Shown one piece after another: positions 4,314-62,190 of a DNA stretch of 64,000 bases (the stretch's first letter is position 1; every line of letters begins with the position of its first letter). This DNA is from Polymyxa betae A26-41 (lineage: Eukaryota > Protista > Endomyxa: Phytomyxea), in NCBI GenBank assembly GCA_003693705.1, contig RBZT01000594.1, positions 1 to 64,000 on the forward strand, in the 5' to 3' direction. Under the pieces are notes generated by a model. That model saw only the letters and a program-made list of their open reading frames with translations, did no database searches and had not been told where the DNA came from. The position numbers and the translations under genes are program-made.

Positions 4314-7300
4314 TCAGCTTAATTGTGTGATATTAAGACCGACTGTACATCGTCCTTGTGATAAGACCAGAACCTGTCTGGTATCAAACTCGATTGAGAT
4401 CTGTTCGGGATCAATGTCCATCAAGTTTCCATCAATAATCTCAGCTAATTTAATACTAGGTACAGGTAAGTAACCACACATAATTGGTATTAGAACTCCT
4501 GATATCACAGCTTCATTCTGAAATGACACACGACCATGAAGCTTGCCAGCATATCGCCATGAACTTTCATCCATCACGATGCTATAAACGATCTGCTGTA
4601 TAATAACCCTTGGTGTTGATACAGTCGATTGTGATGCGCGATTCAATCGAATACTGTATTGGATAGGCTGACCCAGAATACCATTTGATTTACAGCTGGT
4701 AATTATATGAAATAAAGGATTGTGTTTCAGAGATTGAATGTTGATAGGGAAACTGAAATCTGACAGGATCCCATCAGCCGGCTGATATCGAACATTGAAA
4801 TGACCACGGAATACGAAATTCTCCAGAAAATCAGGATCGTCGATATCACGATCTGGGCCAGTTCGGTCGAAAATCTCAAAAATAAAGGAATATCCAGTGT
4901 TGGATGACGGGATGAGATTGGTTGTTAGATGGGGATTGAGATCTTCATATGAGAAGGGTCCTGGTTGAAATGTGTATGAATGTAATAGTACAGGTATATG
5001 AGTGACACAACTTATAATGAGCTGGATGAATGTACGAGATAGGACCGTCTCCATACAAGATGTTAATGATAACGCTGGAGTGAATATAAGAGATGTATGA
5101 GCTTGTGTTGATACATTGACATTATCTACTGTATATGTAAGAGTCAATGATAGATCTTGACGTAATACTCCATCTATTGGTGCATTAATATACAATATTA
5201 TATCTAATACACTTCCTGATACACATTCTGGTATCGGAAACTGTCCTATAAACATACACGAGAATCAGTGAAATTGAACAACAAATTAGAGCACTGAAAT
5301 AAGTGACAAATTACCATTGTGAAGAGTAACATCCATTGATACATTATTGACAGTAACAGTGATATGATCAGTCTGAACCAAGTTCGAGTCCGATATCGAT
5401 TGTAACGATAGCTGTACATTGGTCATGGTATCGTAATTGGATTGACATTGGACCGGGACTGCATGAGTACGACCCAGAATCAATGGCTCCGGTACTGGCC
5501 CCAGACGTAAGGTTGCCGTGGGACTCCGATGACGAACACGAATAAGATGTTGCCCAGACTGATTTAATACTGATTCCAATACCAGCTCATGAATATGAAT
5601 CTGTACGGAGATGGGCCAGTGCTCTCCAGGTATTGCCAGTTTGGCATTGTCGAACACGAACCGATTTGTACCGGAATATAATGTGACAGGACCTAATTCT
5701 AGACGCTCTTTAACTGCCATACAGTCCAGTATGATAATGATATTGGTAATATCAAGATCCAAGCAACAAACTGACTTCAATACGAGTTCGAACTGAAATA
5801 ATTCGTTACTAAAGACATCTGTGTTACAAGCAGTATGTAACTCTGCATGATCACGTTTCAGTTCCAGTGACTGAATATCAACCAATTCAGATCCAGAACG
5901 CCGAAACATTCCAACAGACTCGTCCTTCATTCGTTCCATAAACTATCATTATCACATTAATATTGGAATAGTTTCCCAAACAAGTTCATAACCCGACCTG
6001 ATCCCGAAATCGTCTCCGAACCTGATCTTGTGTTGATTGAATCTTAAATATCATAATACCAGTATCTATATACTCCTGAATATGATTAAGTGCATAATGA
6101 CATTGTGATGTTAGGATCAGATCTGAGAACCAGCAATACGACCACAAATTGCGAGTCGTACTGGTCCCCGGGTCGCATATCTCCAATGCTCTCCGGATAT
6201 CACCACGACGATAATATACACTCGCTAGCCGATATGAGAATGACAGAGCGAATCGATGCCGTCCGGCATCATGAGATGCCCGCCGGACTAGCTCGGCGAA
6301 TGCGATGAAATGTTTCTGATAGAGATCTGGAGATCGAAATGCAGCTTGTAATTGTGATGGTGTGATATCCAATATATCAATATAATCATGTTCATGATCT
6401 TTAATAGATGGAGATGTAAAGGCAACAGATTCCACATTAAAATCCAGAAGATGTAGATTTATACCTGATTGTGTATATGATGATAATGCTATTGATAATA
6501 ACTCAATAATCATAATATGATTGGTCATTTGTGCTATTGATATAACAATACATACTATCTGTATAGTTCTATCTGATAAATCATCATGGAACTTGTTCAA
6601 ATTTCTAACAAACCTTGCTGTACGTTGTAATACATCATCAGCACGATTTCTAACGAATAATAAACGTATCTGTCGACTAAATATAAATGATACATAATGA
6701 TATGGATCAGATGATGATGGTAATGGGACCAGATCATCAGATAATAGCAGAGCGGGCCAGTCTAGATCATGGGCGGGCGTACCGGCCCCGGCGATACTGT
6801 TGGAGATGGATATTGTATCAAGTAGAGCATCAAGTTCATGATATTGACGTAATGCATCATCAATAAGACCAAGATCTTGATAGAATAACGAATATGATTC
6901 CTTAATAGAACAGAATGATTGAAAGTCTAATGAAGTTCCCAATTGTTGCATTGATCGAAGACGATATTCAAATTCAGCACTGCGTTTCTCAGCTGTATTG
7001 ATGACACACCTTTATCACATAATAAATAAATCAATATAGAGATCAGAGAGATGTTATCACCATTTTAATGCAGTAGCGAGGCGATCAGATTGAGTTCGAT
7101 CATTATTAGCACCATCTGCTAGATCAATTAGGATAACCTGGCCTTGATTCGCTGCAATTCGATCGGATAGATCGGCCTCAATACGTTCGACAAGACGACG
7201 AATGGGACGTACCGGCCCCGGTGTGCCAAGCGATACAACGGCCACAAGCCAGGATCTAATTTGAACGAATGGATCATGAACAAACCCATCGATTAAGGAT

Positions 7301-7530
7301 TTATGTCGCTTATAATGATCTATATGATCAGATACAAATAATAATATGCAGAAGAATGCATCTGCTGGATGATGAGGCTCAAGTTCGAACTGAATCTGAA
7401 CTTGTTCGATATGTTTATATGTTCCAGTAGGATCAGAACATATGAGATCTGTTAGAGGTAGACATCGGGTTAATCGTGGTGATATTAGATCCCATATACC
7501 TGATGGATCTCGTACTACACCTATCACCAT
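4314..7530 (-). CDS. TRAPPC10: TRAPP II complex subunit TRAPPC10/Trs130-like (about 3 introns)
   Basis: Motif DFQSFCSIKESYSLFYQDLGLIDDALRQYHELDA; C-terminal WRYAGKLHG...LIPIMCGYLPVPSIKL (gryzun/TRAPPC10 C-terminus). Four consecutive minus-strand ORFs are joined by short GT-AG introns. Confidence 0.85.
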
Positions 7531-8463
7531 CTAATATATTAATCCATATCATTATACATAACCATATCAATAATATAGTCACTCCTTATTTAACACAACA
7601 TAAACGCACTTTTTATTGAATATTTCCTAAATTTCTCCTACTGATAGTAAAAGGCCATTGTAAACAAGCTAGGTTAGGGTCTGTATCGAGGCGCTGGAGA
7701 TATCGATGCAGGAGATCAGCCGTTCTATTGAACCGATTCAGTAATAATCAGTTCATTTCTATATAATGCGGTTATTACGAGGGAATGTCCCCCAAATTGA
7801 ATCTCTTGAGGTGTTTCTCTTAAAGCCTAAGACGCTGGTTACCCTCAATGAATAGTATTGGGTTAAACCAGTATGTGCAACCTCTGAAACTAGATTTGAA
7901 CTGACTCGAATTCTCTTCAATCTACTTGTTATCAATTACTGAGAATCAGATATTGAACAAACAGAACCATAACAATCAGTTTGATAAGTTATAATTTGAG
8001 TAACTGTTAATTAATAGGACAATCAACTAACTCGAAATACTCAAATTATTCCCCATTTACACAACTCGTACAATGAAGTCATCTCAACCAGGTGTTCTTC
8101 CATAATTTCATCTGAGCCGAACTCTATGAATCCCTTGGCTGTTTATCATATACACAAGATATATTAATGTACTCTCAGGTTACTATAAAACCAATGTGAT
8201 CCTCTGAATATCAGTTAAATCCATACAATCTCAATGAACGAAATCAAGGATCTGGTGCAGTTCGCTGTACGTCATGCTGTGTGAAGGTGATGAAATACTT
8301 CATTATCAACGATAGTGACGCGGCAACGCAGAATGTAGCTCGAAAACAGTCAAACTTGTCCGAATTTCGGACTGCGCAATCATGCTGATCCCTCGCCGAG
8401 GGATCAGCATGACCTAATTGACCGTCGGTCTCACTTCTCATGATCGCTGATCTTTCAAAAGCC

Positions 8464-12418: not shown

Positions 12419-13297
12419 TTAAGCAGTCCTTTTGATAATATGAATACCGGAATCAGTTCGTACAGGCTCGCTCAGATCTCCAACTTGTAATGCGAATGTC
12501 GCCATCTCAAACGCCGGCTGCATCTTCCCGCGACCAAATCGGCCCAGATCGCCTGCATAGAAAGCCCTCAATCCACTCAATCGCCAATCAGATAACATCT
12601 CATACCGCCACGTGAATGGCTTGAACATTCGCTATGTTCTTTTGCGATATCCTCGAACGTGTCTTCACCATTAACAACACGCTGACGGAAACCTTTAATG
12701 ATTTCGAGCGCTTCATCCTGAGTCCTGGTTACAGTGTCCTGCTTCCAAGACGATGGACGTCGAGAGTCACGATGCTTCACCAGGATATGGCTCGCACGAA
12801 CCGAATCAACTTCCTCGGCCGCCAATTTCCTCTTCTTCGCCCTAACAAAACTGAGAAAACCAATGATAGCGGAAAGTAAACACGAACTGTTGCTGTTGCT
12901 GTATACCATGCAATGACACAATATATTGACGAGTCGATTTCCCGAATGTAATAGCATCACCATCCTTCAACGTCTGAGGTTCATTGGGCGTCAATTTGAC
13001 CCGGTTCAGACAGGTCCCAGATTCGGAATCTACGACGGCATCAGCAGATCAGCCCCAGGGGCCAGTACCAGGATTCACACCTAGGTCGGAGATCTGTAGC
13101 TCGCCATCGCTGCCAATAGTGACGGCGGCGTGAGGGTCGGAGGCCGACGGATGGACCAGGACGATATCGGCCTGGTCGGAGCTGGCTCCGAACGTCGTGC
13201 ATTGAGCGACACCGATGGCAATGTCCTTGTAAGGCTTGCCATCCCGCAAGACTTGCAGGACGGCATGCGGATGGCGACAATTGGTCGTGCTGGACAT
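12419..13297 (-). CDS. FHA domain + Pin1-type parvulin peptidyl-prolyl isomerase (Par42/PinA-like), 3 introns
   Basis: Spliced FHA: ...[13 protein letters not shown]...[17 protein letters not shown]...[16 protein letters not shown]. Parvulin: [20 protein letters not shown]...[31 protein letters not shown]...[11 protein letters not shown]. Confidence 0.92.
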
Positions 13298-24441: not shown

Positions 24442-26757
24442 CTAATAGACGTCATCTGTCTGTATTTCAACATTGGCGAGCGATATCATCGTCTGAGTAG
24501 CGTCTGTGCTGGTCACAGCCCGATTCCTTTCCCGACCCAAATAGAGACCCAGGGCGAACTCGACAGGCCGTCCCCGGTGGACTTGGTCTTGGATTGTGGC
24601 GCGTAGGCGGCGCAGGGCGATGGCTCCCTGGACGGCTGCATTTGACCTGAGATGCAGCGATAATGTCTGTCGACCAATCTCTCCAACATTATGATCATGA
24701 GATAATCGCCTCCGGAACACATCATCCTGCATCTGCTTCGTCTTCCGTCCAGCCATTAATCGCTCTTCAATAGCAGCCTGGATCGCACGTCGTTCGCCAA
24801 CCAACATGGCGGCGTACTGGTCCAGTTCATGACGCAGCTTCCGATGCACGAATTCGATTTGTCGAATTGCCGCCGTTCTATTCACGAGCTCGTCGTGCTG
24901 CGCTTCACGCCTCTGTCGCATCGTCTCTGACGCGATCTCTTCATGATCACGCTGCAGCTGAACACGTTCCAGAGCGCGATGCCGCTGCACCTGATGCCCC
25001 AACACTTGCACGTCGTACTGGCTCTGGGCCTGCTGCAGGTCGGCGTGGGCTGCTGCCCGGTCTCGTTCGAGTTCGGCGATTTTCTCCTGTCCTTGTCGAT
25101 GTACGATATGAACTTGTTGTTGAACTTCATCAATCTGTTCTTGTGCACGACTTAATTCAGCTCCAGCTCGTGTTAATCGTGATAACATCTCTGTCCTTTG
25201 ACGTTGTCGTTCAACATCACGAGCTACAATCCCAGCCTGTAAGTCCTTCTCACGACGGATTACACCACGACCTCGATCGATCTCATTATCAAGCTGCTGT
25301 CCTCTATCAATCCAATGCTGTATAGATTGAGTCTCCTGCTCTATCATAAACAGATATCGATCTCGTGATGCCGCTGATTTCTGTTTCTGTGCGATCATTA
25401 ACTCACGACGACTTCTATAATCTTCAATCAGCATAAGCTGCTGCTCCGTCTGTGTACGCCATCGTCCCATTTTTGTTACAAGCTCGGTCGTACTGCCCTC
25501 CAGATCATGTTTGGCTTCGTCCAGGTTCGTCTCTAATCTCTGCAGCTCCATCGTCTCCATCGGTATTGTTACATCACGCATATCACACAATTCCTTCTGA
25601 ATTCGATCCAGATCGGCCCGCTCGGTGTCGTACTGGTCCTGGACCCGGTTCAGGTCACGACGCACCCGTCGCCGCTTACGTCTGCAATCGCGCAGTCGTT
25701 GCCGTAGATCGTGATCGTCTCGCTGCGCTCTCTGGACCACCTCCTGCAGCTGTCTCGGAACATCTCGCCTCTCCTCGATCAGAGCGCAGGTCCTGGTCTG
25801 ACCCTCAATTAGATCCCGAATCCGGTCCGTGTACTGGCTCAGATCAGCGCCGTACTGGTCCAGGACGACCTCGGCCTGAACAATGGCGCGCATCCATCGA
25901 TCATCTTCTGATTTCAATTGTCGTCCGGCGGTCGTGGCGACAGCCAGGGTTGCGGATGTGCCCTGCAGACGTCGGGCGGCACGTTGTGCGGCCCAATGCC
26001 CGGCCTGGATCGCGGCTCCGAGCCGGACCGTGCTGGCCCGCAGCGGCCCGATCTGCGACTGGAACTGGGCCAGAGCACGTTGTGCGTTGCCGATCATGGT
26101 CTTGGCGATTGTATCGTGCGCGACGAGATTGTTGAGATCGGCTGTTAACGCCCGGACTCTCAGCGACATCTGCTCAACATCTGTCTGATTCTGTGAGGTC
26201 GATTGCTGCAACTGTATCTCGGCGATCTCAGCGCGCATGGCCGCAATGCGATCGTGCTCGTCCGCGATCTGGTGCCGGAGCGATTCGTGAAGTCGGGCGG
26301 CGTCGGCAGCGCGGCATTGGTATAGGACGAGATCGGCAGCGAGTTCCTCAATCTCTGATTGAAGTCGTTGCGCTACGCTATGTTCGGATTTGTAGCGGAT
26401 CTGAGCGTGATGGCGCCGTTCCATTAGCTGACGACATTGTTGGTTAACATGTTGAGCTCGACGATGTAGATCGGTGGCGATAGCTTGTAGATGATGCTGA
26501 CGTGCCTGAATATCAGATTGCGATTTCTGGAATGATTGTAGAAGTTGACGACGATTGTGATGAGATTGTTGAATAATGTGATTAATTCGTAATGATGATG
26601 TAGAACCTATCTGACATTGTTCTAATAAATACAGATATAATCTCCATATTAAATTAATAACATCATATGATATGTGTCCATACTCACATTTTATATCACT
26701 AATTACTGAATATATTCCACTGCAATATACCAACAACAACGTCTTTCTGCTTTCCAT
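24442..26757 (-). CDS. Long coiled-coil protein, hypothetical
   Basis: 771-codon ORF rich in Q/R/E/L/A heptads; may contain an in-frame intron near the 5' end. Confidence 0.75.
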   Translation of the reverse strand: MESRKTLLLVYCSGIYSVISDIKCEYGHISYDVINLIWRLYLYLLEQCQIGSTSSLRINHIIQQSHHNRRQLLQSFQKSQSDIQARQHHLQAIATDLHRRAQHVNQQCRQLMERRHHAQIRYKSEHSVAQRLQSEIEELAADLVLYQCRAADAARLHESLRHQIADEHDRIAAMRAEIAEIQLQQSTSQNQTDVEQMSLRVRALTADLNNLVAHDTIAKTMIGNAQRALAQFQSQIGPLRASTVRLGAAIQAGHWAAQRAARRLQGTSATLAVATTAGRQLKSEDDRWMRAIVQAEVVLDQYGADLSQYTDRIRDLIEGQTRTCALIEERRDVPRQLQEVVQRAQRDDHDLRQRLRDCRRKRRRVRRDLNRVQDQYDTERADLDRIQKELCDMRDVTIPMETMELQRLETNLDEAKHDLEGSTTELVTKMGRWRTQTEQQLMLIEDYRSRRELMIAQKQKSAASRDRYLFMIEQETQSIQHWIDRGQQLDNEIDRGRGVIRREKDLQAGIVARDVERQRQRTEMLSRLTRAGAELSRAQEQIDEVQQQVHIVHRQGQEKIAELERDRAAAHADLQQAQSQYDVQVLGHQVQRHRALERVQLQRDHEEIASETMRQRREAQHDELVNRTAAIRQIEFVHRKLRHELDQYAAMLVGERRAIQAAIEERLMAGRKTKQMQDDVFRRRLSHDHNVGEIGRQTLSLHLRSNAAVQGAIALRRLRATIQDQVHRGRPVEFALGLYLGRERNRAVTSTDATQTMISLANVEIQTDDVY

Positions 26758-30473: not shown

Positions 30474-32239
30474 TCAGAACCGCCTCTCGTTCTGGCTCCT
30501 GAACCGGTTGAACGACTCGTTGACGGCCTTGAACGTCTCTTCGGCGCGGAACCGCACTGCTGGCTTGCTGCTGATATGCTTATCGGGATGGATCTTGAGC
30601 AGAGTCCGCTTGTAGGACTTGGTGATCTCTTCAAACGTTGCATTAGCTGATAAATAACAGCTCTGTCCAGGTACTGCTCTGTTTACAGCATTTAATAGCC
30701 ATCGAAGGCTACGATTCTTCTTCCAATCTTCCACCTCATCAATAATCTAAGAATGTTAGTTAATCGTTATCCAGATATCTTCTCTGATTTCAAACCGACC
30801 TGAGATCGAAGTTTGTCAACATTATCACGTTCTTGTCGTTCTTTCAATTCGATTTCTTTGATAGCTCGTATTTCCTGTGCCTTCCTGGTCAAAAGGTGAA
30901 CAAGCTCACCACGCTCGAGACATTGCATCTCATGATTGTTCACACCCATCGTTCGAAGCTTGTCTTTTAGCTGACGAATTGGCCATGTAGCATATGGTGC
31001 TTCGCCCTGCGTATTATTGCTCACATAGGCCTGTGATGTTCTATCATGTTTTGGCTGCTGCTGCTGTTGAGGTCTATAATGGCGCCATTGGCTATCAACA
31101 TCCTTCTGCATTCTCTCCCAGATCTTCTTAGCAGATTGTATCACATCTTCTGTACCTCGTTCCTGCTTCTGTTGTCGCTTCTTATCACGATCCCCCTTCT
31201 TTCTTAGCCGAACTTCCTCCTCGTAGAAGAATCGCTCCATCTTCGATAACGAACTCGTATCGATACATTCACCTTCTCTTACGCGAGCTCGTATTTCAGC
31301 TTCAACTGCAGCGACTGCCTCCAACTCATTTCTGGCTTTCTCCTGCACCTTCTTAAGCTCCTCTTCTTGGCGAGATTCACCATGATCGTCTGGATCTCTA
31401 TACTGATGATAGATCTCTTTCCTGCTATTTTTAGCTGGATCGTCTTCGCCCTTTCTATTCAACGATGCACTATTCCAGTGTTGTTCATCGCGTCGATTTC
31501 TGATCTCCTCCTGGACGACTTTTTCAACATCATGATTTCTATCTTCGTTATCGATATTCTTCTGCGATCGTGGATATGATTGTTTCTGATGGCGAATTTC
31601 CTCGAACTTCTTTCGATCCGATGCCGTAGTTCTGACGGCATGCTTTGAAGGCTGGCACGCGTCATTAGAACGCCGAATCGGAACGGACCCGGCCGAAGCC
31701 GCTGCCGATCTGGTATCAGCAGCCAGACGTTTGAGGCGCTCTTTCAAAGAGCCATTATTGCGATTTCGTTCCGCTGCCGCCGTTGACTGCGGTGCTGTGC
31801 GACGCCCTTCACTATGCTTTTCCATGGCTTTACGTAAAAGGCGGTCGACTCGAGTAGCAGACGATTCCGCCGCGATCCGATGTCGTTTCGGAATCGCCAG
31901 AAAGTCGTCGCCTGCATTGAAACGATCCGAAGGAAGCGAATCCGGGAAGCTGTCGAAGGCACCCCATCGACGCTGGCTTTTGGCGCGGATGGAATCTGCT
32001 CGGTTTTTCGCCTTTGTATATCGTCGTCGCCATTCGTTAACAACTCGACGGTATTGTATGGGAGATGCACGATCTGGGGGCGGAACCGACATGATCGGTG
32101 GCAACATCATATATCTGGCACGGCTCTCTTGATTTTCCAGTATGTACGCGCAACCGATCCGAAATCCAAAATCATTTTCCAGAAATAGGGCTACTTCGGC
32201 GCTGATATTTTTAGTATCACGTGGAAGAATTAGTCTCAT
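30474..32239 (-). CDS. Auxilin-like protein with a C-terminal J domain; 5' end uncertain
   Basis: C-terminal W.K.RSLRWLL..ITKSYKRTLLKIHPDK..RAEETFKAVNESF (HPD J-domain at the extreme C-terminus) after a long charged/coiled-coil region. Confidence 0.75.
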
Positions 32240-33259
32240 AATTAATGAAGCGCTGCAGGTTCTACCCGATTCGAAAGGAAAGCTCTTACTGTGCAATCCG
32301 ATTGACAGCGGTATCCTACTCGCATGTTTCCAAACAGGAAGCGAACTCGTTCGCTATCTATGCATGGATGATTGCAAACAGACAAAGTTTCAAAGAAACC
32401 TTGTTTAGGAGTTCGTCGAAGGAAATGAAAACCGTCCAAAACTTGCAAGTTCGCTTATGGCTCTCCCTTGCTGATGGCATCTAAAAAGGGATAAACGAAA
32501 AATCGGACGATCGCGTTGTGTTGCACTGGCACTTCTGCGGTGCTTTCCAAATTAGTTCTCAAGACATGATTTATCTGATTTTTTTTTCTAAAATATGGAT
32601 CCAAATGATCCGATACGAATTGTTGAGTTGTGTTTGAGTTCAATTAGAGCTCCAAAATATGATGGAAAGCAGAGTTGACGAGAGGCAGGGCGCTGAAACG
32701 AGTCGTTCGCGCCAGATTGATGCATCTGATCCCATGCGACAATGTTGTCATTGGGAATCGCTCATAAGACCTCGACATGGCGGTAATCGTGAGGTCGGTG
32801 CCGAATATGCAACTGGACTGTGTTTGCGGGACGTCGTCGAAGATGGCGAAGGGACGACTGGGCGGGTATTCGGCTGTGCTCGCGTGTCGCTGAATTCGAC
32901 GGAATCTGGAGATGGTGACTGCCATTTCAGATTGTGTGAGCCCAGACTCTTGAATGTAATACATTTATACAGCAGCAATATTCCATCATGTATGGTGACC
33001 TATGTGACAAGCTTATAAGGAGTTGAGTGGACAGGCAAATGAGGCGATTCAGAAACTGATAGTCGCCTTGGTTTGATAATGGATGACGCAATCAAACCCT
33101 AACCCTAAAGCATCAAGGCACATGACATTGATTTGGACTCAGTGGAATCTGTGAATACGAAAACGAACCATCCTATCTGCATTGGCCGTACTGGTCCATC
33201 ATCATCATCATGATGGCAGGCGATGGTTCTGGTCCAGGTCGTCACAGACCGATCTCGTC

Positions 33260-34511
33260 ATGCCGGACGATGTGCTCGTTATCGATCTTGGGAGCGGGGT
33301 GGTGAAGGCTGGCTGGGCCGGCGAGGATCAGCCGCGCTCGACTCAGCCCATGGCGGTGGCTCGCGTGCGTCGGGCGTCGGCAGCCCCGACCTCGAATGAC
33401 GATCTGTTGACGGGCAACGACGCCATCCGATCGGTTGCCGATCATAGCCACGCCCTTGAGCTCATGTCACCTCTGGATCGCGGCGAGATCGTTGAATGGA
33501 ACGCCGTCCAGCAGACTTTCGCCTCGATCTACGCTCACGATCTCGGCGGTGTTGATAGCTCTGCCTATCCCGTCCTGATCACAGAATCACCATTCGCCAG
33601 TCCCAAGCAGCGAGAGAAGCTCGCCGATCTCCTGTTCCGGCACTTTCGTGCTCCCGCCATCCTCATCTATAATGCCGCCGTCCTGTCCCTCTGTATGGAA
33701 ATGTGTCTTTTTAGTCAAATCCCCTAAAACCCTAATCGTGTAGTCTCATCCGGGTACGAGCCCCTGTCGGTTGGCGTCTGATGCTGATTGTTACAGATTG
33801 ACGACGGGATTGGTGGTAGAATCGGGTGAGAGCAGCACCTATACTGTCCCTATATTTGAAGGTATCTTGAGAGACCTTAAAGCCACATCATCATAACCCT
33901 GAATCAGGTTATCCATTACGTCATGGGATCGATTCAATGGCGATCAGCGGTGTCGAGCTCACCCATCACATGACGGCAGCGCTACAGAAGCCCGACCTGC
34001 GTCTGGACGTAGCGCGTGACATCAAGGAACGATTCGCAGCAGTCCGCGGCAACCAACATCACGTACTGGACCCGGTCCAGTACGAACTCCCAGATGGTAG
34101 ATAGACAGACAGGGCGACGATATCTGACGATCTGTAGGGACGATGTTATCGATTCCGAACGAGGTCAGATATTCGACAGGTGAGATGCTGTTCCAGCAAG
34201 GCCTGCCGGATGTCGTGTTCAGATCTCTGGCGAAATGCGACTCGAACCTGCAGACGGCGATGCTGAGCCGGATCGTAACGGCGGGCGGTTCGACGTTGAT
34301 GAGAGGATTCCATGATCGGTTCACGAGCGAGATTGAGACACGAGCTCATGAACTGTATCCAGGAGCACAAGCAGCGGTCTTTGGGAAAAGGAAACATGCA
34401 GCATGGATGGGAGGATCTATGCTGGCATCACTCAGCACATTTACAGATCTGAAAATCACGCGACAGGAATTTGAAGATGGGGACGATATCGTTCATAAGA
34501 AGTATTTTTAA
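33260..34511 (+). CDS. Divergent actin-related protein (4 introns)
   Basis: VIDLGSGVVKAGWAGEDQPR; PVLITESPF; LSLFSSGLTTGLVVESGE; YELPDG; AGGSTLMRGFHDRF; AAWMGGSMLASLSTF; IVHKKYF. Confidence 0.93.
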
Positions 34512-34884
34512 CATATCCGAAAACAAATCGATATATTCTGACATACAGACAACCAATGCCTGAAATACATGCAAATCTTTATTTTTTAGATGAAAGCTAC
34601 TCTTGTTTCATTAACCGCAAATTAGTCCTAGATCCAGTTCGTGATTTTCTACGCCCCAACAAGAGCCCTCCATTCCCGAAAGACGAATCCAGAGCGATGT
34701 TCAAAGTCAAAAGCAAAAACTACGAACATCACTGCGAAATCGCAGGCCAATGAAGCCCTGCAACCGAACAAGCAATCTTAATCCGGATCCCAATGGGGCT
34801 TCAAGAGGTATCCTCTCACAATGCACTTCATTGGGATTCGAACAGATACACGATTTATTGTTGAACAACAACGCCAGACGACAT

Positions 34885-35725
34885 TTACTGAGAAGCCAGA
34901 GAGACCAACTCCTTCTTCTTTTCACCTGAGCAACCACACAATCAGACCAGTACGACCGCAGATTCAGCAATATCGGTTACGTTCGAGCTTGTTGAGCTTA
35001 GCGGTGGCTTTAACACCGAGGTGGTGCTTGCCCCATTTACGGAACGAATCGGTGTTGTTGTTGAACTTCTCCAAGCAGGATCGGGTCAGCTGATCCAGAG
35101 CGCCGACGTCCTCTTTGCGAACATCGGTAACGGCCAGGCAGGTGGCGGTCTTCTGGTGGACCAGCATTCCCAATCGAGCCATTCCCTTAACAATACAGTA
35201 GGGGATGTTCTTAGCACGGCACAAGGCGGGCAACCAGATGACGAGCTCGATGGGGTCAACATCGTGAGCGATCACGACGAGCTTAGCCTTGTTCTTCTCG
35301 ATCAGAGACGTAACATGGTTCAGACCGAACTTGATGAATTTCGGCTTCTTGGATTCAGCGTTGACACCGGCAGCGACCTTCTCGGCGACGGCTTTGAGAC
35401 GCTGACGCTTCTCCGGGCGAGTCTCAGGGCGGTACTTGGACAGAAGCTTGAAGAGGGTGGTGGCCCCAGCCTTGTCCATGGTGTTGGTGAAGTGGTTCAC
35501 AGAAGGAGGAGCTTTCAATCGCTGCTTCAGGATAGCACGCTGACGCTGGATACGGATGTATCGGGGCCATTTCACATAGCGACCAAGATCACGCTTTGGC
35601 TTCAGATCACCACCAATACGGAATTGACGAGGACGAGAGATGAACAGGTGAGAGTGCTGCTCATGGAAGGTGGATGGAGCCGGGGCGGAAGCGGAAGCGC
35701 CGGTGCTCTTCTTGGCCTGGGACAT
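34885..35725 (-). CDS. RPL7A: 60S ribosomal protein L7a (eL8), 1 intron (34926-34980)
   Basis: PKRDLGRYVKWPRYIRIQRQRAIL; GLNHVTSLIE; LVVIAHDVDPIELVIWLPALCR. Confidence 0.98.
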
Positions 35726-35955
35726 GATGACAAACGGGGTGTGAAGACAACGATGGGGCCGGGATTCGAGAGACGCAGTCCGCCACGGACTCAATCCAGA
35801 ATATATGAGATCGCGCTAAACCTTGTCTGCATCCACCGAAACACGATTTAAAAAATCCGCCTTTGTGTAGGAAAAAAACAGAATTTTTTTTCTGCGCGAC
35901 TGACCCACCACGGACTTTTCTCACGAGGAAATCGTCGTGTTTTTTCAGTTAAATC

Positions 35956-36495
35956 ATGGCGAAAAAGAGCAGCAGGAGAGCACGTCTGGGCGCAGCTTCG
36001 ACGGCGAACAGGCGGAATCGTCTAAAGCGGAAGCTGAAGAAGAGCGAAGACGCGCGTCCGCTTCTATGTGGCTCCTTGATTGTGCAGAATTGGGACAAGA
36101 ACCTGAGCCTGGCTGAGAACTACAAACGGCTCGGATTATGCCAGGACCCAAACAAAGATTCGCTGCTGAAAATCGCCCGGAATCAGAAGAAGAAACTTTC
36201 TCAGCCCGTAGACGAAGCCATGACTGACGAATCATCATCGGATGAGGAAACGTCGGAAGAAGCCAACCCGATCAAAGCGAAATTGCAAGAGATGGCCGCG
36301 AATCCTCCCAAATTAGTCAGTACGATGCCGAAATCAATGCCAATCCAGGAGCAATCCATGATGGCGGCGCTGGTGAAGAAATACGGCGATAACGTGGAGG
36401 CAATGTCTCGCGATATTAAGCTGAACAGACTCCAGAAGACGAGCGCCCAGCTGCGATCTCGTCTGCAGCTCTATCAACAGCTTCAATCCCTCTAA
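35956..36495 (+). CDS. NOP16: Ribosome biogenesis protein Nop16
   Basis: NWDKNLSLAENYKRLGL..DPN and LVKKYGDNVEAMSRDIKLN.LQKT..QL motifs. Confidence 0.92.
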   Translation: MAKKSSRRARLGAASTANRRNRLKRKLKKSEDARPLLCGSLIVQNWDKNLSLAENYKRLGLCQDPNKDSLLKIARNQKKKLSQPVDEAMTDESSSDEETSEEANPIKAKLQEMAANPPKLVSTMPKSMPIQEQSMMAALVKKYGDNVEAMSRDIKLNRLQKTSAQLRSRLQLYQQLQSL

Positions 36496-52234: not shown

Positions 52235-55200
52235 ATGGGGCGCCGTCGTCGCTATCGTTCCAGGGAGACGTTGGACCAGCTGGAACTCGAGCAGCTGATT
52301 GAGTCGCGTAAAGCGGCATATTTAGACAAAAAGCTCGGCAAGGAGCACGTCGAGCAGATCGAAGCTAGTAATGGACTGAAGGCTGCCGAGCGCGAAGTTA
52401 AGCTCGAATGTGCTGCCATCTTACGAAACATTCCGAAGAGCATGGCAGCCTCGGAGCTGGTTCAGACTTTAAGCCAGCGAGCTGGCTTTCAGGATGAAAT
52501 CATCAAGTGTAATATTCTGACTGAGAGCGGCAGCCATCATCGCTCCAACGGCAGCGCCCTAATCGTATTCAAAACCCCGACCGATTTTCAAAAGATTGCC
52601 GATTTATGCAAGCGAGGGTTTCGTATCCAAGGGCTTGAGGTTTCAATCAAGGAGAAGGCAAATTGGCAAAGAGGCGGTTCTCGTGGGGATTGCTCGAAAG
52701 TTTTCGCGGTCATCACAATGCATTTGTGTGCTGGTGATCGAGATCTGCAATCGTTGGAGCCTTCGGTTGTTCGTTGGTCCTGCTCTAGGGATGTATCATT
52801 GCAGGTAAAATATCAGGCTCTTGGTGTCTTTGAATGTTTAAGATTTTACAGATTAATCCTCGTAGCGTTCGCCAAATAGCTATTGAATTCAATAGCCAGT
52901 TTCGCATTGAATTTCCTCTAAAAAGCATTCGTCAATCGCGACTTCTGCAAAATGCAGAAGGTAGAGAAGTCTATCGATTTCGATTGGGAGGTCCTCCACA
53001 CGTTTTCGTCCGAGAATCAACCGATTCGCGTCATGCTTCTGGTATGCTTGCTAATATTCTTAGAGGCATGAAATCCGATAAGCGGGTCTGGGAGCTTGGC
53101 GGAGGCAATTCACGCGATCACAAATGGGAGCGTACAATTGATCCTAGCGGGTTTTCAGCCTTTGGGCACTGTCTGGTTTATGAGCTCATTCTTGGACAAT
53201 CTCCTTTCAACTTGAAGGAAGTGCTGTCGCAATTCTCGATTACACCACCGGTTGTTCCTGGTGCCGTTCCAGATCCCATTGAGACCGAAGCCTTCCTAAG
53301 TGATGGCAACTGGAGCGGTGGCTATGATCATGTTTTCGAGTCGCTTCCTTTCCCAATTCAGTATATGCTTCACGCCTGTATTGCTAGTCATAAGCTTTGC
53401 CTACGAAATCGGCAAGCTGCTCAAACGCTGTATGATGCTCTCACAAATCCGGATCTTCATCCGGAAAAAGCTGTGGAGGAGCTTGAGAATTGGTATTTCG
53501 ACGGGTATCCGACCAAATTTCACGAGTTGCTTGATCATCTTTCGGCAGCTGTTGAACCCGATGCCCAGCCAGAGCTTCTTGACAAAGACCCTCGCCGTAG
53601 TGCCTTAACGCGCCGAGTGCTAATTACGCCTCTCAGGATCTGCCCCCTTCCACTTGATGTTGATTCAAGTAACCGGGTTCTGCGATCCTTTTGGCGATAC
53701 CGCGACCGCTTCTTGCGTGTTAACTTCTGTGATGAGGACTTCGGCAACGTCATGCAAGTCGTGCGGTCGCCAGATGTCATGGAGCGTCGCATTCGGCACT
53801 TCGTTAGTGACGGAATTGTGATTGGCGGAAGGAAATTCGTTTTCCTGGCTTATTCGAACAGTCAGCTCCGAGAGCAGTCATGCTGGATGTATGATGAAGA
53901 TTATCGCGATGATGACGATGATGATGATTTCCCGTCTGCTGCCGAGATCCGAGAGTCGATTGGCGATTTGTCTCACATTTCGGTGGTTGGAAAGCATGCT
54001 GCCCGATTAGCGCAAGCATTCTCGTCTACCATTGCTGGTGTGAGAATGTTGGATTGGCAGTATCGAATGGTTGACGATGTTGAGCGGAATGGCTTCTGCT
54101 TCTCCGACGGATGTGGTGTTCTTTCATCTACTCTTGCTGAAAAGATTGCTGCTGAGCTTCGTCTTACCAACGTTCCCAGTGCATTTCAAATTCGATTCGC
54201 TGGCAGCAAAGGCATCGTTGGCGTCCGTCCTTACGGTGCTATCAACATTCCAGATGTGGACTTGGTTCTTCGTAAAAGCATGACGAAATTTGTCGCTAAT
54301 GAAGCGCATCGCGACTTGGAGATCTGCAACTATTCCAAGATTATGCCATGCTATCTCAACCGGCAAATCATCAATCTTCTTTCTTGTTTGGGAGTACCTG
54401 ATCGCTCGTTCCTGGATTTGGCTGATGCTATGCTCAAGTCGATGGATCATGCAATGTCGGATTACGATTCGTGCTGCGAAATGGTTCGTGATAACGCCCC
54501 GGGATCGATTGCCGACCGCATGCTTGATGCTGGGATCAAGCCTGAGAACGACCGCCATCTGTGGGAGCTGGTTCACGCTCTTCGTGATCGTCTTCTTATG
54601 GATGTTCAAACCAAAGCTCGCATCTTCGTGCATCAGGGCCTCACTCTTTATGGGTTGATGGACGAGACCGGCTTGTTGGAGCCAGATGAGGTCTTCTTGC
54701 AGCAATCGGATCCGCCCATGATGCTTCCGCCTGGAACTCGCGTAGCTGTGGGACGTTCGCCTTGTCTTCATCCCGGTGATATTCGAATTCTTCGCACATC
54801 TGACTGCCCAGAACTCTCAAATCTGTACGATGTGGTCGTCTTCTCTCAGCAAGGTGAACGTCCTCAGCCGAACATGATGTCGGGAGGAGATTTAGATGGA
54901 GATATTTATTTCATCATCTGGGATGAGACTTTGCTCCCGGCTGAAGAGTATCCTCCTATGGATTATGCTGCTCCTTCTCAGCAACCTGTCTCCGTCTCTG
55001 ATCAAGTCGATGTTACCCACATTCAAGACTTCTTTGTGAACTACATGAAGAACGACAATTTAGGTATCACTAAGAATCGATATTTTTTCAGTTCCATGAA
55101 TTAAGTTTCTTCAGGTCGAATTGCTAATGCTCATGTTGTCTTCGCCGATCGTGCTGAAGAAGGCGCCAAGTCCGCTGAATGCCTAATGTTAGCAGAGCTT

Positions 55201-56512: not shown

Positions 56513-56721
56513 TACAAAGTTCACATTCCCTTATTAACCCTAACCTCGTTTATTTCAATAATCGATTGGGCTGGTCGTTCGTTCTTTCCGTTGCAATCGT
56601 CTTATCTGATTCTTCCCGGTCTAAAAAAAAATTGCGCTGTTTTGTTTGGCTTGACCGGCTGTGAAACGTAAGTCAAGAACGCCGGCAGCCCTTTGTCTCC
56701 ATTTCTCAAATCGTTCATGAG

Positions 56722-58887
<2,166 letters not shown>

Positions 58888-59528
58888 TTAATGAAGTGTC
58901 AATGTACGAGAGATGCCTTTCTTCTGTCAGGTTTTGCATTGGACTTTCGCTTATAATTCAACAGCCGCCTTCATACGCCAAAAACTTTCTTATTATTAGG
59001 GATCGCTATAGCTGCAATCTCTTGTTCTGAATGCTTCCCTATTGCTCTATGTATAAAAATGAATCTCGCTTTGTCCAACGATTATTGTTGCCACCACCAA
59101 ATCCTCACAATCTGCTGTTGATATATGCTATTATCTTGTTTCTGGTATCTTCAGGAGCCTATTACGACGCATTCTGTCTTGGTAATGCATCTGTACTTAA
59201 ACTTTTCATTTCTCTACCGTCGGTCCATATTCAGTTCTGAGCTTTATTTCGTCACCACCAGGTTTCGTGACGACGATGTTTGCTGTTGGGAAAGTGCCCA
59301 AGCCATTCTAGATAGTTATATTTTGCAATCAGAAAGGTCCCGAGTTCATGACCAAGTATGGAGCGCTTTGATGGTTTCTTAGTTGGCGCTCTCTTTCTTT
59401 ATAGACTAACTGAGAAGGTCAATCTCTCAGTGGTTTCTTCAGTGGTTTTTTATGGATGGTTCCTCTGACAGCTAATGCCAACATAAGATCAATGAAAGCC
59501 AACAATCCCGTGACGATGGTGCATTCCG

Positions 59529-60398
59529 ATGAGTGAAATATCTCAAGACGACTGTTGCCAGCATATAAAGGATCAACTGAATACCTCTGTAAGCTCACAG
59601 CAATTAGACGATGTCAAAGCACGGGTCGATGAATGCCTAATAGCAGACTCTCTGACCGACATCTTCACTCTAATGAAAGAGCCGAATTTATTCGTATTCG
59701 TATACTGTAGCTTCTATCACGTTATTCAATGCTCGTGCATTGAAAGACTGCAAAGTCGAAAGTGTCAATCTAAGGCAGAGCATCATTCAGGAAGCATCTC
59801 GAGATTTTGTAGCTTTCTAAAGGAAATCGTGTTCTTGAGATTTTCTCGCCAACGATCGAATCCGTACATATGCATGGGCGAATCGTTTAGAAACCCAACG
59901 ACAGCCTCCACACGCAGACGATCGTACTCCCTAGCCGGCGATGCAATTGCCATTGCCCTGTCTGACGACCTACGAAATACTTTCTCTAGACGCCTGAAAG
60001 ATTACATCCGTGAATCCGAGCCAATATCACCTCGGCTCGTATTTGCAGGTCCCGAGTTCTTCGACCATGAATTAGAATTCGTTTTTAATCCATTCACAGT
60101 TTCCGAAAAAGTTGTCACATTCTTCTATTCGATCTGCAGGGGATCGAAAACTGAACGAATCGGTCCAAGACAGTTCCTGGGAGCGCTTCGTCGCCATCGA
60201 ATCGTCGGCGAACGCCCCTGCCCGGTTTCTGTCAACGAGGCCGACCTGGCCTTCATCCGAGCTCGGAACCCTCTGCGAACGACATTGAACGTGGACGCCT
60301 TCGAGCGCGCCCTGGCTGACATCGCCAAGCATGCCTTCTTTGACGACCCGTATCCGCTGGCGAAATTGTTCACACTTATTGATTTTGAACGAGTTTAA
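59529..60398 (+). CDS. Protein with a C-terminal p25alpha/TPPP-like domain; 5' end uncertain
   Basis: FLGALRRHRIV..EADLAFIRAR..LNVDAFERALADIA resembles the p25alpha motif (D+IF..vk....I.F..F..AL..IA). Confidence 0.5.
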   Translation: MSEISQDDCCQHIKDQLNTSVSSQQLDDVKARVDECLIADSLTDIFTLMKEPNLFVFVYCSFYHVIQCSCIERLQSRKCQSKAEHHSGSISRFCSFLKEIVFLRFSRQRSNPYICMGESFRNPTTASTRRRSYSLAGDAIAIALSDDLRNTFSRRLKDYIRESEPISPRLVFAGPEFFDHELEFVFNPFTVSEKVVTFFYSICRGSKTERIGPRQFLGALRRHRIVGERPCPVSVNEADLAFIRARNPLRTTLNVDAFERALADIAKHAFFDDPYPLAKLFTLIDFERV

Positions 60399-60708
60399 TG
60401 AAGGTGCAGATTGTATGTAATAAGGAAAAGTGCGAGCCCACTTTTTTTGAACACTGCGCACTTATTGTAAAGATAGAACGCAACTTTTATTCGATTGCTC
60501 TTGTCGTTCTGGTTTCGCCGACGCCATTTTCTCGAGCGTCGGCTTAGCTAGGTTGGTCAATACGTCGGCCGTCAATTTCAACACACACCTGGTCGTTCAC
60601 TTGTCAAGTGTATGAATTGACGTCCCGGTGGAGGGCAGCCGACAACTTCTGATCTTCTCAAATTTGCTTAACTGTCGCCTTAATAGATTGTTTATTTTCG
60701 ATATCTAT

Positions 60709-62190
60709 CTAGATAGCAGGGTCAGCGATTTGACGAGCGAACTTGAAATCGTGCCAGTCGAAGTCGCTGGGGACGTAATGCAGCAGAAGGCTGGAGAACT
60801 CGCGTCCCGAGGTCGGCATCGGATCCCTCCAATGAATATGTCGACGGCCACGAAACAGCACAGCATCGCCATCTCTCAGGACGATCTTCACCGATTCGGC
60901 TCTGGGCGGCAGCGCCTGCCATCCCGCCTTCTCTTGCTCTTGTCTGATCGTATGAACCCAGATAGGCCAGGCGCCACCTCCTCCATTATCATCATAATGC
61001 ATCTGTATAGAGACCGTCCACTCATTATCTTCACGATCTGTATGAGGCTTCAATACAGGGCGGCCTCCTCCTTCTACAACTCGATGCCAACATAGAAATG
61101 AATAGACATGTTTGATAGATTGATCAGCGATCTGGTTCAAGACGCCTGTTAATCGCTGTCCTAACCAATGACTAACTCGATCATTATAGGTGATGGTTCT
61201 GCTCAGTTCCGGATCGTAATTCGTCACGATGCCGTCGCGGATCAGGTCGGCGTAGAATTCCTGAATCTGTCGTACTTCCCAGGGCGTCACAAACCCGCGA
61301 AGCACCACGAAATCCAGGTCGATCAGCGTCCGCCGCGCCGTCTCCAGGTTGGCGAACCCTCCGGCCACATCGACATCGGCGCCGAACCAGGACGACGACG
61401 GCCGCAGGAATTCGCGCCCATCGCTGCCATTACGACGTTGGCGGAACGCCTCGAACAGGTCGCGGAAGGCGATCAGCTTCCGCAGCCGGGCGGCGTACTG
61501 GTCCGGCTCCAGGTCCGGGTCGGTGTGGTCGTAGACGCGATCGTAAAAGTTCTCGTGGACATCGCCATCGGCCAGCTCGCGGGCCGCATAGAAACTCGCC
61601 TATCAAAGCGAACAATCAGCAACGACGACGTCGGGTGAAAGGGCGGCGGCGTACTTTGGCACGATCGAGGGCGCCGCCGAACTCGTCAATGTAGCCCAGG
61701 TAGAGATCGGCTCGAGCCGAGCACGAGCTGACACCGCGCACTCCATGCAGCAGGTCGGCGGCGTCGTCGTCGCGTCCCATCACGAACTGGAGCACGGCCT
61801 GGGCCAGTACGGGTTCGCAGGCGTCCGGCGCCAGTCGCGCCTGCCAACACGCACAGCAATCTCAGATTTCCGGGGCCAGTACGACACACACGACGACCGT
61901 ACCGCTTCCTGGAAGTAGCCGACGGCAGTCTGGGCCTGGGTCGGTAATGCTGGCCCCGAGGTCGAATTGATGGAATCGAGGGCGTAGAGCCGCCCCAGCT
62001 GCATGGCGGCGTCGTAATCGGTGGCGCTGATCGCCTGCAGATGATGAACGTAGTCGAGGTTGGGTCGGGCGCCATCGCTTCTCCATCCGTAGTAGAAGGA
62101 GGCGGCGATGGCGATCACGGCGACCACGGCCGGCGTCGTCTGGCACCAGCGACGGCTGGATGACGCCGGGGTCTTGACTGCAACCGACAT
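60709..62190 (-). CDS. Membrane-anchored TPR-like + 2OG-Fe(II) oxygenase protein (2 introns)
   Basis: TM VVAVIAIAASFYYGW; TPR-like helices; oxygenase LKPHTDREDNEWTVSIQ..WPIWV..GDAVLFRGRRHIHWRDP..LLHYV (HxD...H). Confidence 0.8.

What the first reader, a model, noticed from the sequence alone, without database searches (positions are those of the whole stretch)
5492..61882. Highly iterated dispersed 10-mer GTACTGGNCC in exons, introns and a leader region, in any strand and frame
Seen: exact GTACTGGNCC at 5492(+), 6158(+), 13059(-), 24814(+), 25630(+), 25852(+), 33188(+), 34063(+), 34074(-), 61495(+), 61801(-) and 61873(-). Near-copies occur as GTACCGGCCCCGG at 6779 and 7209 and GTACTGGTCT in the RPL7A intron. 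A rough base-composition estimate gives only ~0.3-0.5 expected copies in 64 kb on both strands, against 12 counted by eye. It is read in different frames (DQY, VLA/VLD, GPV, GTS). It also sits in two introns (FHA-parvulin, 2OG oxygenase) and upstream of the ARP start codon, so protein coding alone does not explain it. Copies fall in GC-rich patches, and I saw none in the intron-dense genes (kinesin, LCB2, CDPK). Inference: a DNA-level signal, such as a protein-binding, chromatin or replication site, a methylase/repair-driven mutational motif (analogous to cyanobacterial HIP1), or a recombination-hotspot motif tied to GC-biased conversion. I do not recall it being described in a eukaryote.
Basis: partly seen in the sequence, partly recalled or inferred. 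Interest (0 to 1): 0.85.

Follow-up and report, generated by a model that had tools for sequence, protein, structure and literature searches.

The report
Genome-wide 11-mer marking GC peaks
The beet-root protist Polymyxa betae carries about 1,300 copies of one exact 11-letter DNA word (CGTACTGGHCC), written over exons, introns and leaders on either strand at the tops of local GC-rich peaks; I found no description of anything like it in a eukaryotic nuclear genome.

Summary
All 12 copies of GTACTGGNCC are real (0.12 expected). The true unit is the 11-mer CGTACTGGHCC, with 1,334 copies in the 27-Mb genome against 26 for the reversed word. The genome matches the Polymyxa betae draft.

- **Sharp word:** one-off variants are barely enriched.
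- **Not a repeat:** flanks are unrelated.
- **Not coding-driven:** it occurs on both strands, in all six frames, and in an exon, a leader and a probable intron. It survives synonymous-codon shuffling (9 observed, 0.57 expected) and local Markov controls.
- **Tied to GC peaks:** 14 of 15 sampled copies lie in GC peaks that cover 9% of the sequence. GC falls symmetrically from 0.60 at the word to 0.50 at 300-400 bp. Within one AT-rich exon, GC3 rises from about 0.1 to about 0.55 at the word.
- **Written in place:** it encodes the conserved VLDR of a tubulin with the rare codon GTA.
- **Lineage-restricted:** 23 kb of Plasmodiophora brassicae has none.
- **No 5mC route:** CpG is not depleted, and no C5-methylase, Vsr or Dam was found.

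My best reading (about 0.4) is a recognition word coupled to recombination-associated GC-biased conversion. The mechanism is inferred, not shown. Other first-stage notes recorded the same word elsewhere in this genome.

The parts
5492..5501 (+). Exact 10-mer GTACTGGCCC (base -1 is G). It is antisense in a TRAPPC10 exon and is read as GPV. It sits in a ~200-bp GC islet of an AT-rich gene.
6157..6167 (+). Full 11-mer CGTACTGGTCC. It is antisense in TRAPPC10 exon 5986-6951 and is read as GTSTT in a loop that varies between species. Local GC3 is 0.5-0.57 against 0.1-0.2 in the rest of the exon.
6779..6788 (+). Near-copy GTACCGGCCC (the T5>C variant, within CGTACCGGCCCCGG) at the core of a ~25-60 bp GC islet in the TRAPPC10 exon.
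7209..7218 (+). Near-copy GTACCGGCCC, the same 14-mer CGTACCGGCCCCGG, in another GC islet of TRAPPC10.
13059..13068 (-). Exact 10-mer GTACTGGCCC (base -1 is G) inside a putative 52-nt GT..AG intron of the FHA-domain gene. The intron is not RNA-verified.
24813..24823 (+). 11-mer CGTACTGGTCC, antisense in the orphan coiled-coil ORF 24442-26757(-), read as LDQYA.
25629..25639 (+). 11-mer CGTACTGGTCC in the same ORF, read as QDQYD.
25851..25861 (+). 11-mer CGTACTGGTCC in the same ORF, read as LDQYG. It lies in the GC peak 25542-26441 (maximum GC 0.69).
33187..33197 (+). 11-mer CGTACTGGTCC in the transcribed leader, 13-22 nt upstream of the likely ATG of the actin-related protein (ARP) gene. It lies in the GC peak 33149-33699 (maximum GC 0.68).
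34062..34084 (.). Two 11-mers in inverted orientation (CGTACTGGACC C GGTCCAGTACG) inside ARP exon 33906-34095, read in one frame as VLDPVQY before the conserved ELPD. Such pairs are rare, with only 3 in the genome.
34944..34953 (-). Near-copy GTACTGGTCT (one-off at the last base) inside the RNA-verified RPL7A intron 34924-34978.
61494..61504 (+). 11-mer CGTACTGGTCC, probably antisense in ORF 60712-61599(-), read as PDQYA. It lies in the 1.95-kb GC peak 60714-62663 (maximum GC 0.70).
61801..61811 (-). 11-mer CGTACTGGCCC in the same GC peak. Its coding status was not settled.
61873..61883 (-). 11-mer CGTACTGGCCC in the same GC peak. Its coding status was not settled.

Best explanation
CGTACTGGHCC is a DNA-level recognition word specific to the Polymyxa lineage, at least relative to Plasmodiophora. 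It is not a repeat copy and not a coding by-product.

Most likely a sequence-specific DNA-binding or repair factor reads it, and that factor is coupled to recombination-associated, GC-biased repair. Places that carry the word are the foci of short-range GC-biased gene conversion, which builds a symmetric GC/GC3 peak of about +/-300-400 bp. The word itself is written and kept in place by point substitutions, either by the same biased conversion or by selection for it. It therefore accumulates wherever the protein sequence tolerates it, in any frame, on either strand, and in exons, introns and leaders.

Shown here: the over-representation, the sharpness, the in-place origin, the independence from frame and strand, the GC-peak association, and the absence from a P. 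brassicae sample. Inferred: the binding factor, the link to recombination, and whether the word causes the peak or profits from it.
For: - **Over-represented and sharp:** 1,334 vs 26. One-off variants as a class reach only 1.2x the control. In 264 kb the exact 11-mer occurs 15 times, and each one-off variant 0-4 times.
- **H, not N:** the G variant has 63 copies, against about 445 for each H variant.
- **Stands alone:** flanks are unrelated and no partner motif was found.
- **Both strands, all frames:** 872 forward and 832 reverse in the genome; 17 sense and 20 antisense in confident ORFs, with all six frames seen.
- **Written in place with unusual codons:**
  - GTA CTG GAC CGG encodes the conserved VLDR of an alpha-tubulin-like protein.
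  - GTA makes up only 10% of Val codons in GC3-rich ORFs, and 4 of 4 G-[ADV]QY sites use the word's codons, against 0.62 expected.
  - Synonymous shuffling gives 0.57, against 9 observed.
  - There is no clean insertion relative to the Spongospora and Plasmodiophora TRAPPC10 proteins.
- **GC peak:**
  - GC is 0.60 at 0-50 bp, about 0.50 at 300-400 bp and about 0.47 beyond 800 bp, symmetric on both sides.
  - Same-composition control words have flank GC of 0.476, against 0.567 for the word.
  - 14 of 15 exact 11-mers lie in peaks covering 9% of the DNA, and all 5 peaks with maximum GC >=0.68 carry it.
  - GC3 within one exon swings from about 0.1 to about 0.55 at the word, so the effect is on synonymous sites.
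- **Density follows GC:** 0.76 per kb at GC >=0.55 and 0.009 per kb below 0.50. In AT-rich DNA the count is about the chance level.
- **Commonest variant checked** is T>C, an AT-to-GC change (264 copies).
- **P. brassicae:** 0 copies in 23.3 kb at 60% GC.
Against: - Classical hotspot-determining motifs are eroded by the conversion they trigger. They are not enriched 50-fold. An extra force, either drive toward the word or selection, has to be assumed.
- No recombination, population-polarised substitution or protein-binding data exist for this organism.
- GC-biased conversion needs heterozygosity, and the mating system of P. betae is poorly known.
- Most GC peaks (28 of 45) have neither the exact word nor a one-off variant. 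The word therefore cannot be the only cause of GC peaks. It could be a product of the process rather than its trigger.
- Only 264 kb of unbiased sequence plus 30 motif-centred 3-kb loci could be read. The rest rests on pattern counts with a reversed-word control.
Confidence: 0.4

Rival explanations
1. The word is a selected protein-binding site for chromatin or transcription, for example clusters of the same site for a multi-zinc-finger or Myb-type factor embedded in gene bodies of a compact genome. The GC peak is then a secondary property of such regulatory islands.
For: - The word is sharp, carries about 20 bits and has H at one position, like a protein recognition site.
- Copies cluster within single genes, for example 3 exact and 2 near copies in ORF 24442-26757 and 4 in 3 kb of L023 and of L027.
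- Several carrier genes look flagellar or ciliary: HYDIN-like, a tubulin paralogue and coiled-coil proteins.
- Telomere-like boxes also sit at the edges of GC peaks.
Against: - There is no excess in AT-rich DNA.
- No positional tie to gene starts was seen. Copies lie mid-exon, in introns and at 3' parts of genes.
- A binding site alone does not explain a smooth +/-300-400 bp rise at synonymous positions.
Confidence: 0.25
2. This is a HIP1-like process. A sequence-specific DNA methyltransferase marks part of the word (GTAC or GGHCC), and a methylation-dependent mismatch repair creates and maintains it.
For: - In cyanobacteria, HIP words co-occur with methyltransferases that recognise their cores. 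A methylation-dependent repair model has been proposed (PMC4390886).
- The word contains two classic methylase targets, GTAC and GGNCC (my own knowledge).
- The genome has three short partial matches to the N6/N4 DNA-methylase family PF01555, the best with E = 6e-11.
Against: - The word is not a palindrome.
- No PF00145 C5-methylase, no Vsr and no Dam-type methylase were found.
- CpG observed/expected is 0.92-1.24 in all GC classes.
- The PF01555 matches cover only about 50 residues around the SAM-binding end.
Confidence: 0.12
3. The copies are relics or ends of a tiny mobile element, or short templated GC-rich insertions. This would resemble Rickettsia palindromic elements or mitochondrial GC clusters that insert into genes.
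For: - GC islets of 25-200 bp sit inside the AT-rich TRAPPC10 gene, each with the word or a near-copy.
- Two of these islets share the same 14-mer.
- One perfect inverted pair exists.
Against: - Flanks share no similarity and there are no terminal repeats or target duplications.
- One-off variants are scarce, unlike decaying copies.
- Inverted pairs are rare, with 3 in the genome.
- The word encodes conserved residues in place.
- There is no clean insertion relative to orthologues.
- GC3 is raised over 50-100 codons, not just over the word.
Confidence: 0.04
4. The enrichment is a by-product of codon, dicodon or peptide preferences in GC3-rich genes, or an assembly or contamination artefact.
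For: - 24 of 37 confidently framed copies share one codon phase, GTA|CTG|GHC or its complement GDC|CAG|TAC.
- The flanks show a GNC codon periodicity.
- The assembly is a binned metagenome.
Against: - All six frames and both strands occur.
- A copy lies in a leader and a near-copy in an RNA-verified intron.
- Synonymous shuffling removes the word: 0.57 vs 9 observed, and 3.1 vs 9 even when shuffling within 40-codon blocks.
- The two main readings give unrelated peptides, VL[ADV] and [ADV]QY.
- N=G is avoided although GGC and GCC are common codons.
- The copies are present unchanged in RNA contigs from three independent studies.
- Word-rich and word-poor stretches share one contig.
Confidence: 0.02

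Closest known systems
HIP1 (GCGATCGC) and alternate HIP words of cyanobacteria
   Same: Both are exact short GC-rich words, hugely over-represented genome-wide. Both are laid over coding sequence in any frame, have few one-off variants, and are lineage-specific. For HIP1 the suggested maintenance is a repair bias rather than copying of a repeat (PMC4390886).
   Different: HIP words are palindromes, occur in bacteria, and co-occur with cognate methyltransferases. This word is asymmetric, sits in a eukaryotic nucleus, and is confined to GC3 peaks. No C5, Vsr or Dam genes were found.
Recombination hotspot motifs with GC-biased conversion footprints (the PRDM9 13-mer CCNCCNTNNCCNC in humans; M26/CRE and other motifs in fission yeast)
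   Same: Both are specific words of about 10-13 bp at the centre of a short symmetric GC-enriched tract, independent of strand and gene features, and specific to a lineage (my own knowledge for the comparators; here).
   Different: Known hotspot motifs are not over-represented and tend to be eroded. This word is about 50-fold over-represented. PRDM9 is restricted to animals. No recombination data exist here.
Chi sites and other over-represented bacterial repair or uptake words (Chi GCTGGTGG; USS/DUS)
   Same: All are asymmetric exact words, enriched by selection or drive linked to recombinational repair, and tolerated inside genes through codon choice (my own knowledge).
   Different: Chi is oriented with replication and acts through RecBCD. 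USS/DUS act through DNA uptake. Neither system exists in eukaryotes, and neither sits on GC peaks.
Rickettsia palindromic elements and mitochondrial GC clusters
   Same: Both appear as GC-rich islets inside AT-rich protein-coding genes.
   Different: Those are inserted mobile units with shared sequence and hairpin structure. Here only 11 bases are shared, and the word is made in place.
Telo-box and other short promoter words
   Same: Both are short exact words scattered through a compact genome. Telomere-like 8-mers are also enriched at the edges of GC peaks here.
   Different: Telo-boxes sit at gene edges and in introns. This word lies mostly inside coding sequence, at the peak summits.

Membership tests
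HIP-type iterated words (cyanobacterial HIP1 and alternates) | Exact short word over-represented genome-wide, irrespective of frame, with few one-off variants | tested here: met
   1,334 vs 26. One-off variants as a class reach 1.2x the control. All six frames occur.
HIP-type iterated words (cyanobacterial HIP1 and alternates) | The word is a palindrome | tested here: not met
   The reverse complement of CGTACTGGHCC is GGDCCAGTACG. Only the sub-words GTAC and GGHCC/GGDCC are symmetric.
HIP-type iterated words (cyanobacterial HIP1 and alternates) | A cognate DNA methyltransferase is present in the genome | tested here: inconclusive
   No PF00145 or PF02086, and no Vsr. Three short partial PF01555 matches could not be read. 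The assembly is incomplete.
Recombination hotspot motif with GC-biased gene conversion | A symmetric GC (synonymous-site) peak centred on the motif, on the scale of a conversion tract | tested here: met
   GC is 0.60 at 0-50 bp and falls to about 0.50 at 300-400 bp on both sides. Control words show no such peak. GC3 is 0.1-0.2 and rises to 0.5-0.57 at the word.
Recombination hotspot motif with GC-biased gene conversion | Raised crossover, conversion or double-strand-break rate at the motif | not testable with these tools
   No cross, LD map or break map is available for P. betae.
Recombination hotspot motif with GC-biased gene conversion | The motif is not over-represented and tends to be eroded by its own activity | tested here: not met
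   The word is about 50-fold over-represented, and it is unchanged between strains at the three copies covered.
Chi-like repair-stimulating word | Asymmetric over-represented word whose orientation follows replication direction | not testable with these tools
   Over-representation is met. Totals by strand are equal (872 and 832), but replication direction is unknown in a 1,001-contig draft. Neighbouring copies share orientation somewhat more often than not, 19 vs 9 by my count.
Miniature transposon or mobile insertion relics | Copies share flanking sequence, terminal repeats or target duplications, and show a spectrum of decayed variants | tested here: not met
   Flanks are unrelated. Variants are scarce. 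There is no insertion relative to orthologues.
Transcription-factor site (promoter element) | Positional bias toward gene starts or non-coding regulatory DNA | tested here: inconclusive
   Most copies are inside long ORFs, one is in a leader, and one is in a probable intron. There is no genome annotation to test positions at scale.

The most novel reading that the evidence does not exclude
P. betae has a eukaryotic nuclear counterpart of bacterial signature words. The 11-mer spreads through the genome by sequence-specific biased gene conversion: a dedicated factor makes the word-bearing strand win in heteroduplex repair, or shields it from break formation. The word then accumulates by drive exactly where recombination is hottest. 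It overwrites codons and even amino acids (DQY, VLD, GPV, STT) and leaves GC3 peaks as its wake. The GTWAC islands and telomere-like boxes that other readers noted in this genome could then be further products of the same overprinting machinery.
Probability: 0.2. Interest if true: 0.92.

Novelty: new variant of a known kind. Interest (0 to 1): 0.78.

Why it matters
Over-represented exact words maintained at the DNA level (HIP1, Chi, uptake sequences) are known from bacteria. I know of no case in a eukaryotic nucleus, and two literature searches found none.

Here one sharply defined word marks the summits of strong, very local swings in synonymous-site GC, from about 0.1 to about 0.55 within one exon. 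That makes it a ready handle on what creates GC heterogeneity in a small protist genome. Pull-down, modification calling and comparison of isolates could test directly whether a sequence-specific factor focuses or exploits GC-biased conversion.

It also shows DNA-level pressure that shapes protein sequence, for example the recurrent DQY and VLD tripeptides. Practically, it gives a species-specific signature for recognising Polymyxa DNA in root and soil metagenomes.

Tried and rejected
- **Long repeat or transposon ends:** rejected. Flanks are unrelated, no partner motif was found, and inverted pairs are rare.
- **Codon or dicodon artefact:** rejected by synonymous shuffles, frame counts and codon usage.
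- **Pure GC-composition effect:** rejected by Markov models within GC classes and by same-composition words.
- **CpG-island-like protection from methylation decay:** rejected, since CpG observed/expected is about 1 everywhere.
- **In-frame insertion:** not supported by the TRAPPC10 alignment with Spongospora (P0118) and Plasmodiophora (P0119).
- **Orthologue searches:**
  - The orphan coiled-coil ORF had no homologues.
  - Searches with the tubulin-like and RdRP ORFs gave no plasmodiophorid DNA.
  - The RdRP-related contigs L055 and L056 come from unknown organisms and lack the word.
Spongospora therefore could not be tested.
- **Genome letters:** The PF01555-like loci and the word-rich contigs could not be read.
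- **Strain comparison:** strain X12 is about 0.8% divergent but shows no change in the three copies covered. That is too few sites to learn anything about gain or loss.
- **Spliced models:** Exons were searched singly by reference.

Full report
**Observation.** 100 dinucleotide-preserving shuffles gave a mean of 0.12 and a maximum of 2. The 40-base flanks of the copies share nothing, so this is a dispersed short word and not a longer repeat. The near-copies at 6779, 7209 and 34944 are also real.

**Organism.** The window is contig C885 of a 27,085,814-bp assembly in 1,001 contigs. This matches the Polymyxa betae draft: 1,001 contigs, 27,085,946 bp, GC 45.1% (PMC6328671). P. betae is a plasmodiophorid and the vector of beet rhizomania virus. 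Window GC is 0.453.

**The true unit.** Word counts against the reversed word were:

| Word | Copies | Reversed control |
|---|---|---|
| GTACTGGNCC | 1,704 | 223 |
| CGTACTGGHCC | 1,334 | 26 |
| CGTACTGGGCC | 63 | 13 |
| CGTACCGGHCC | 264 | 39 |
| 10-mer, exactly one mismatch | 6,824 | 5,581 |

- A logo of 58 copies shows C at position -1 in 91% and almost no G at the variable position.
- The G variant has 63 copies, about one-seventh of each H variant.
- In 264 kb of unbiased sequence the exact 11-mer occurs 15 times, and each of its 30 one-off variants 0-4 times.
- The commonest variant I counted, T5>C, reaches a fifth of the main word.
- The word is therefore sharply defined at about 20 bits. 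No second motif accompanies it within 80 bp.
- Inverted pairs like the one at 34063-34083 are rare, with 3 in the genome.

**Not a coding artefact.**
- In copies that lie in a clearly longest ORF, all six frames occur: 14, 10, 7, 3, 2 and 1. Sense and antisense are balanced, 17 vs 20.
- Two frames dominate and share codon boundaries, GTA|CTG|GHC and GDC|CAG|TAC. They give unrelated peptides.
- Shuffling synonymous codons within 49 long ORFs leaves 0.57 copies, against 9 observed. Shuffling within 40-codon blocks, which keeps local GC3, leaves 3.1.
- GTA is the rarest valine codon in GC3-rich ORFs, at 10%. All four G-[ADV]QY sites use exactly the word's codons, against 0.62 expected.
- In an alpha-tubulin-like gene the word encodes the conserved VLDR as GTA CTG GAC CGG. 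A second copy replaces a loop residue stretch.
- In the actin-related protein (ARP) gene the inverted pair reads VLDPVQY, running into the conserved YELPD.
- In the orphan coiled-coil ORF 24442-26757 the word appears three times as DQY, and SQY occurs twice more. The DNA word appears to shape the protein.
- Aligned with the Spongospora and Plasmodiophora proteins, the TRAPPC10 copies lie in variable loops without a clean insertion. The word is made in place.

**Non-coding copies.**
- Contigs of three runs carry spliced joints, so they derive from RNA.
- They verify introns at 30747-30799, 33693-33795 (two introns around a 9-nt microexon), 33860-33905, 34096-34136 and 34924-34978.
- The last is the RPL7A intron and holds the near-copy CGTACTGGTCT.
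- The copy at 33188 lies in the leader, 13-22 nt before the likely ARP start.
- The copy at 13059 lies in a plausible 52-nt GT..AG intron. That intron is not RNA-verified.

**Association with GC peaks.**
- Density is 8 copies in 10.5 kb of tiles with GC >=0.55, 6 in 34.5 kb at GC 0.50-0.55, and 2 in 219 kb below 0.50. Within the rich tiles this is still 20-50 times the Markov expectation, up to order 4.
- Around 43 copies, GC is 0.60 within 50 bp. It falls symmetrically to about 0.50 at 300-400 bp and to about 0.47 beyond 800 bp.
- Words with the same base composition have flank GC of 0.476, against 0.567 for the real word. They occur 1.57 times each on average, against 18.
- Of 15 exact 11-mers, 14 lie in GC peaks that make up 9% of the sequence. 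All five peaks with maximum GC >=0.68 carry the word. Of 45 peaks, 9 carry the exact word and 8 more only a one-off variant.
- In the AT-rich TRAPPC10 gene, four narrow GC islets each hold the word or the T>C variant. GC3 in one exon swings from 0.07-0.2 to 0.5-0.57 at them.
- The rise is at synonymous sites, so a regional neutral process is implied rather than amino-acid selection.

**What it is not.**
- CpG observed/expected is 0.92-1.24 in all GC classes. There is no methylation-decay landscape and no CpG-island logic.
- The genome has no match to the C5-methylase, Vsr or Dam-type families.
- Three short partial matches to the N6/N4-methylase family exist.
- 23.3 kb of P. brassicae around its TRAPPC10 gene (GC 0.60) has no copy and a single GTACTGG. 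At the density of P. betae GC-rich tiles, about 18 would be expected. The word is therefore not a shared plasmodiophorid feature, as far as this one sample shows.
- Spongospora DNA could not be reached.

**Mechanism.** The data fit a word read at the DNA level by a sequence-specific factor and tied to a local GC-biased process.
- My preferred reading is recombination-associated GC-biased gene conversion, focused at the word or favouring it. It accounts for the symmetric peak on the scale of a conversion tract, the effect on synonymous sites, the indifference to strand, frame and gene structure, and the lineage specificity.
- It does not by itself explain the 50-fold over-representation, because classical hotspot motifs erode. 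One must add drive toward the word or selection for it. The direction of causation also stays open, since most weaker GC peaks lack the word.
- A selected chromatin or transcription site is the main rival. A HIP1-like methylation-repair route (PMC4390886) is a weaker one.
- Mobile-element relics and coding artefacts are essentially excluded.

**Prior knowledge.** Two literature searches found no description of this word or of a comparable nuclear phenomenon. The P. brassicae genome paper mentions no such motif.

**Earlier notes of this scan.** Other first-stage readers saw the same word on other pieces of this genome (s1-684315, s1-658465, s1-674036). They also noted other overprinted words and telomere-like boxes at GC-rich domains. 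I treat these as leads only. My GC-islet result was obtained before I read them.

**Limits.**
- Only the window, 200 kb of contig C1 and 30 motif-centred 3-kb loci could be read. Of the 58 copies in the logo and frame counts, most come from loci that were selected with the extension NGG.
- Genome-wide figures rely on a reversed-word control.
- Exons were searched one at a time, and no joined spliced model was used.

Noticed in passing
window 33095-33108 and 33728-33735; L007 (C1:62196 and 62660); C1:11119; C1:42693: Telomere-like 8-mers (AACCCTAA/TTAGGGTT) sit at the edges of GC peaks. They bracket the ARP first-exon peak 33149-33699 and the C1 peak 62230-62665. AAACCCTA occurs 7 times against 0.22 expected in GC-rich tiles.
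   Followed up: partly
window 33693-33795: RNA contigs from three runs show a 9-nt microexon (TCTCATCCG) between two short introns of the actin-related protein gene. The first of these introns contains CCCTAAAACCCTAA.
   Followed up: partly
G000:C964:23341-23502(-), C851:53672-53827(+), C536:4891-4962(+): Three short partial matches to the N6/N4 DNA-methylase family PF01555 (best E = 6e-11, model positions 163-217). They could be a DNA methylase or another SAM-dependent enzyme, and I could not read them.
   Followed up: no
window (GC-rich tiles) and C1: Other over-represented words occur in GC-rich tiles: GCACTCGA/CACTCGAG/GAGTGCGC (12 vs 1.1), GCGGCCGC (14 vs 2.1) and CAAAGCCA. The palindrome CCTGATCAGG was counted 6 times over both strands of the window (3 sites, if each site is counted once per strand), against 0.2 expected.
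   Followed up: no
window 30500-36400: One RNA data set (X12, a different host label) carries a P. betae strain about 0.8% divergent from the assembly, with 39 differences. Three of them lie within 25 bp upstream of the inverted word pair and none lies in the words.
   Followed up: partly
window 52834-55104(+): A cellular RNA-dependent RNA polymerase (PF05183, E = 4e-151). Its best relatives are only 42% identical, and no named Plasmodiophora hit appeared.
   Followed up: partly
window 24442-26757(-): A 771-aa Q/R/E-rich coiled-coil ORF with no Pfam family and no homologue among 5.8 billion proteins. It carries 3 exact and 2 near copies of the word.
   Followed up: partly
GC-rich tiles of window and C1 vs L051: The dinucleotide signature of P. 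betae GC-rich tiles (CpG o/e 1.24, TpA 0.55) resembles that of the P. brassicae locus (1.23, 0.62).
   Followed up: no
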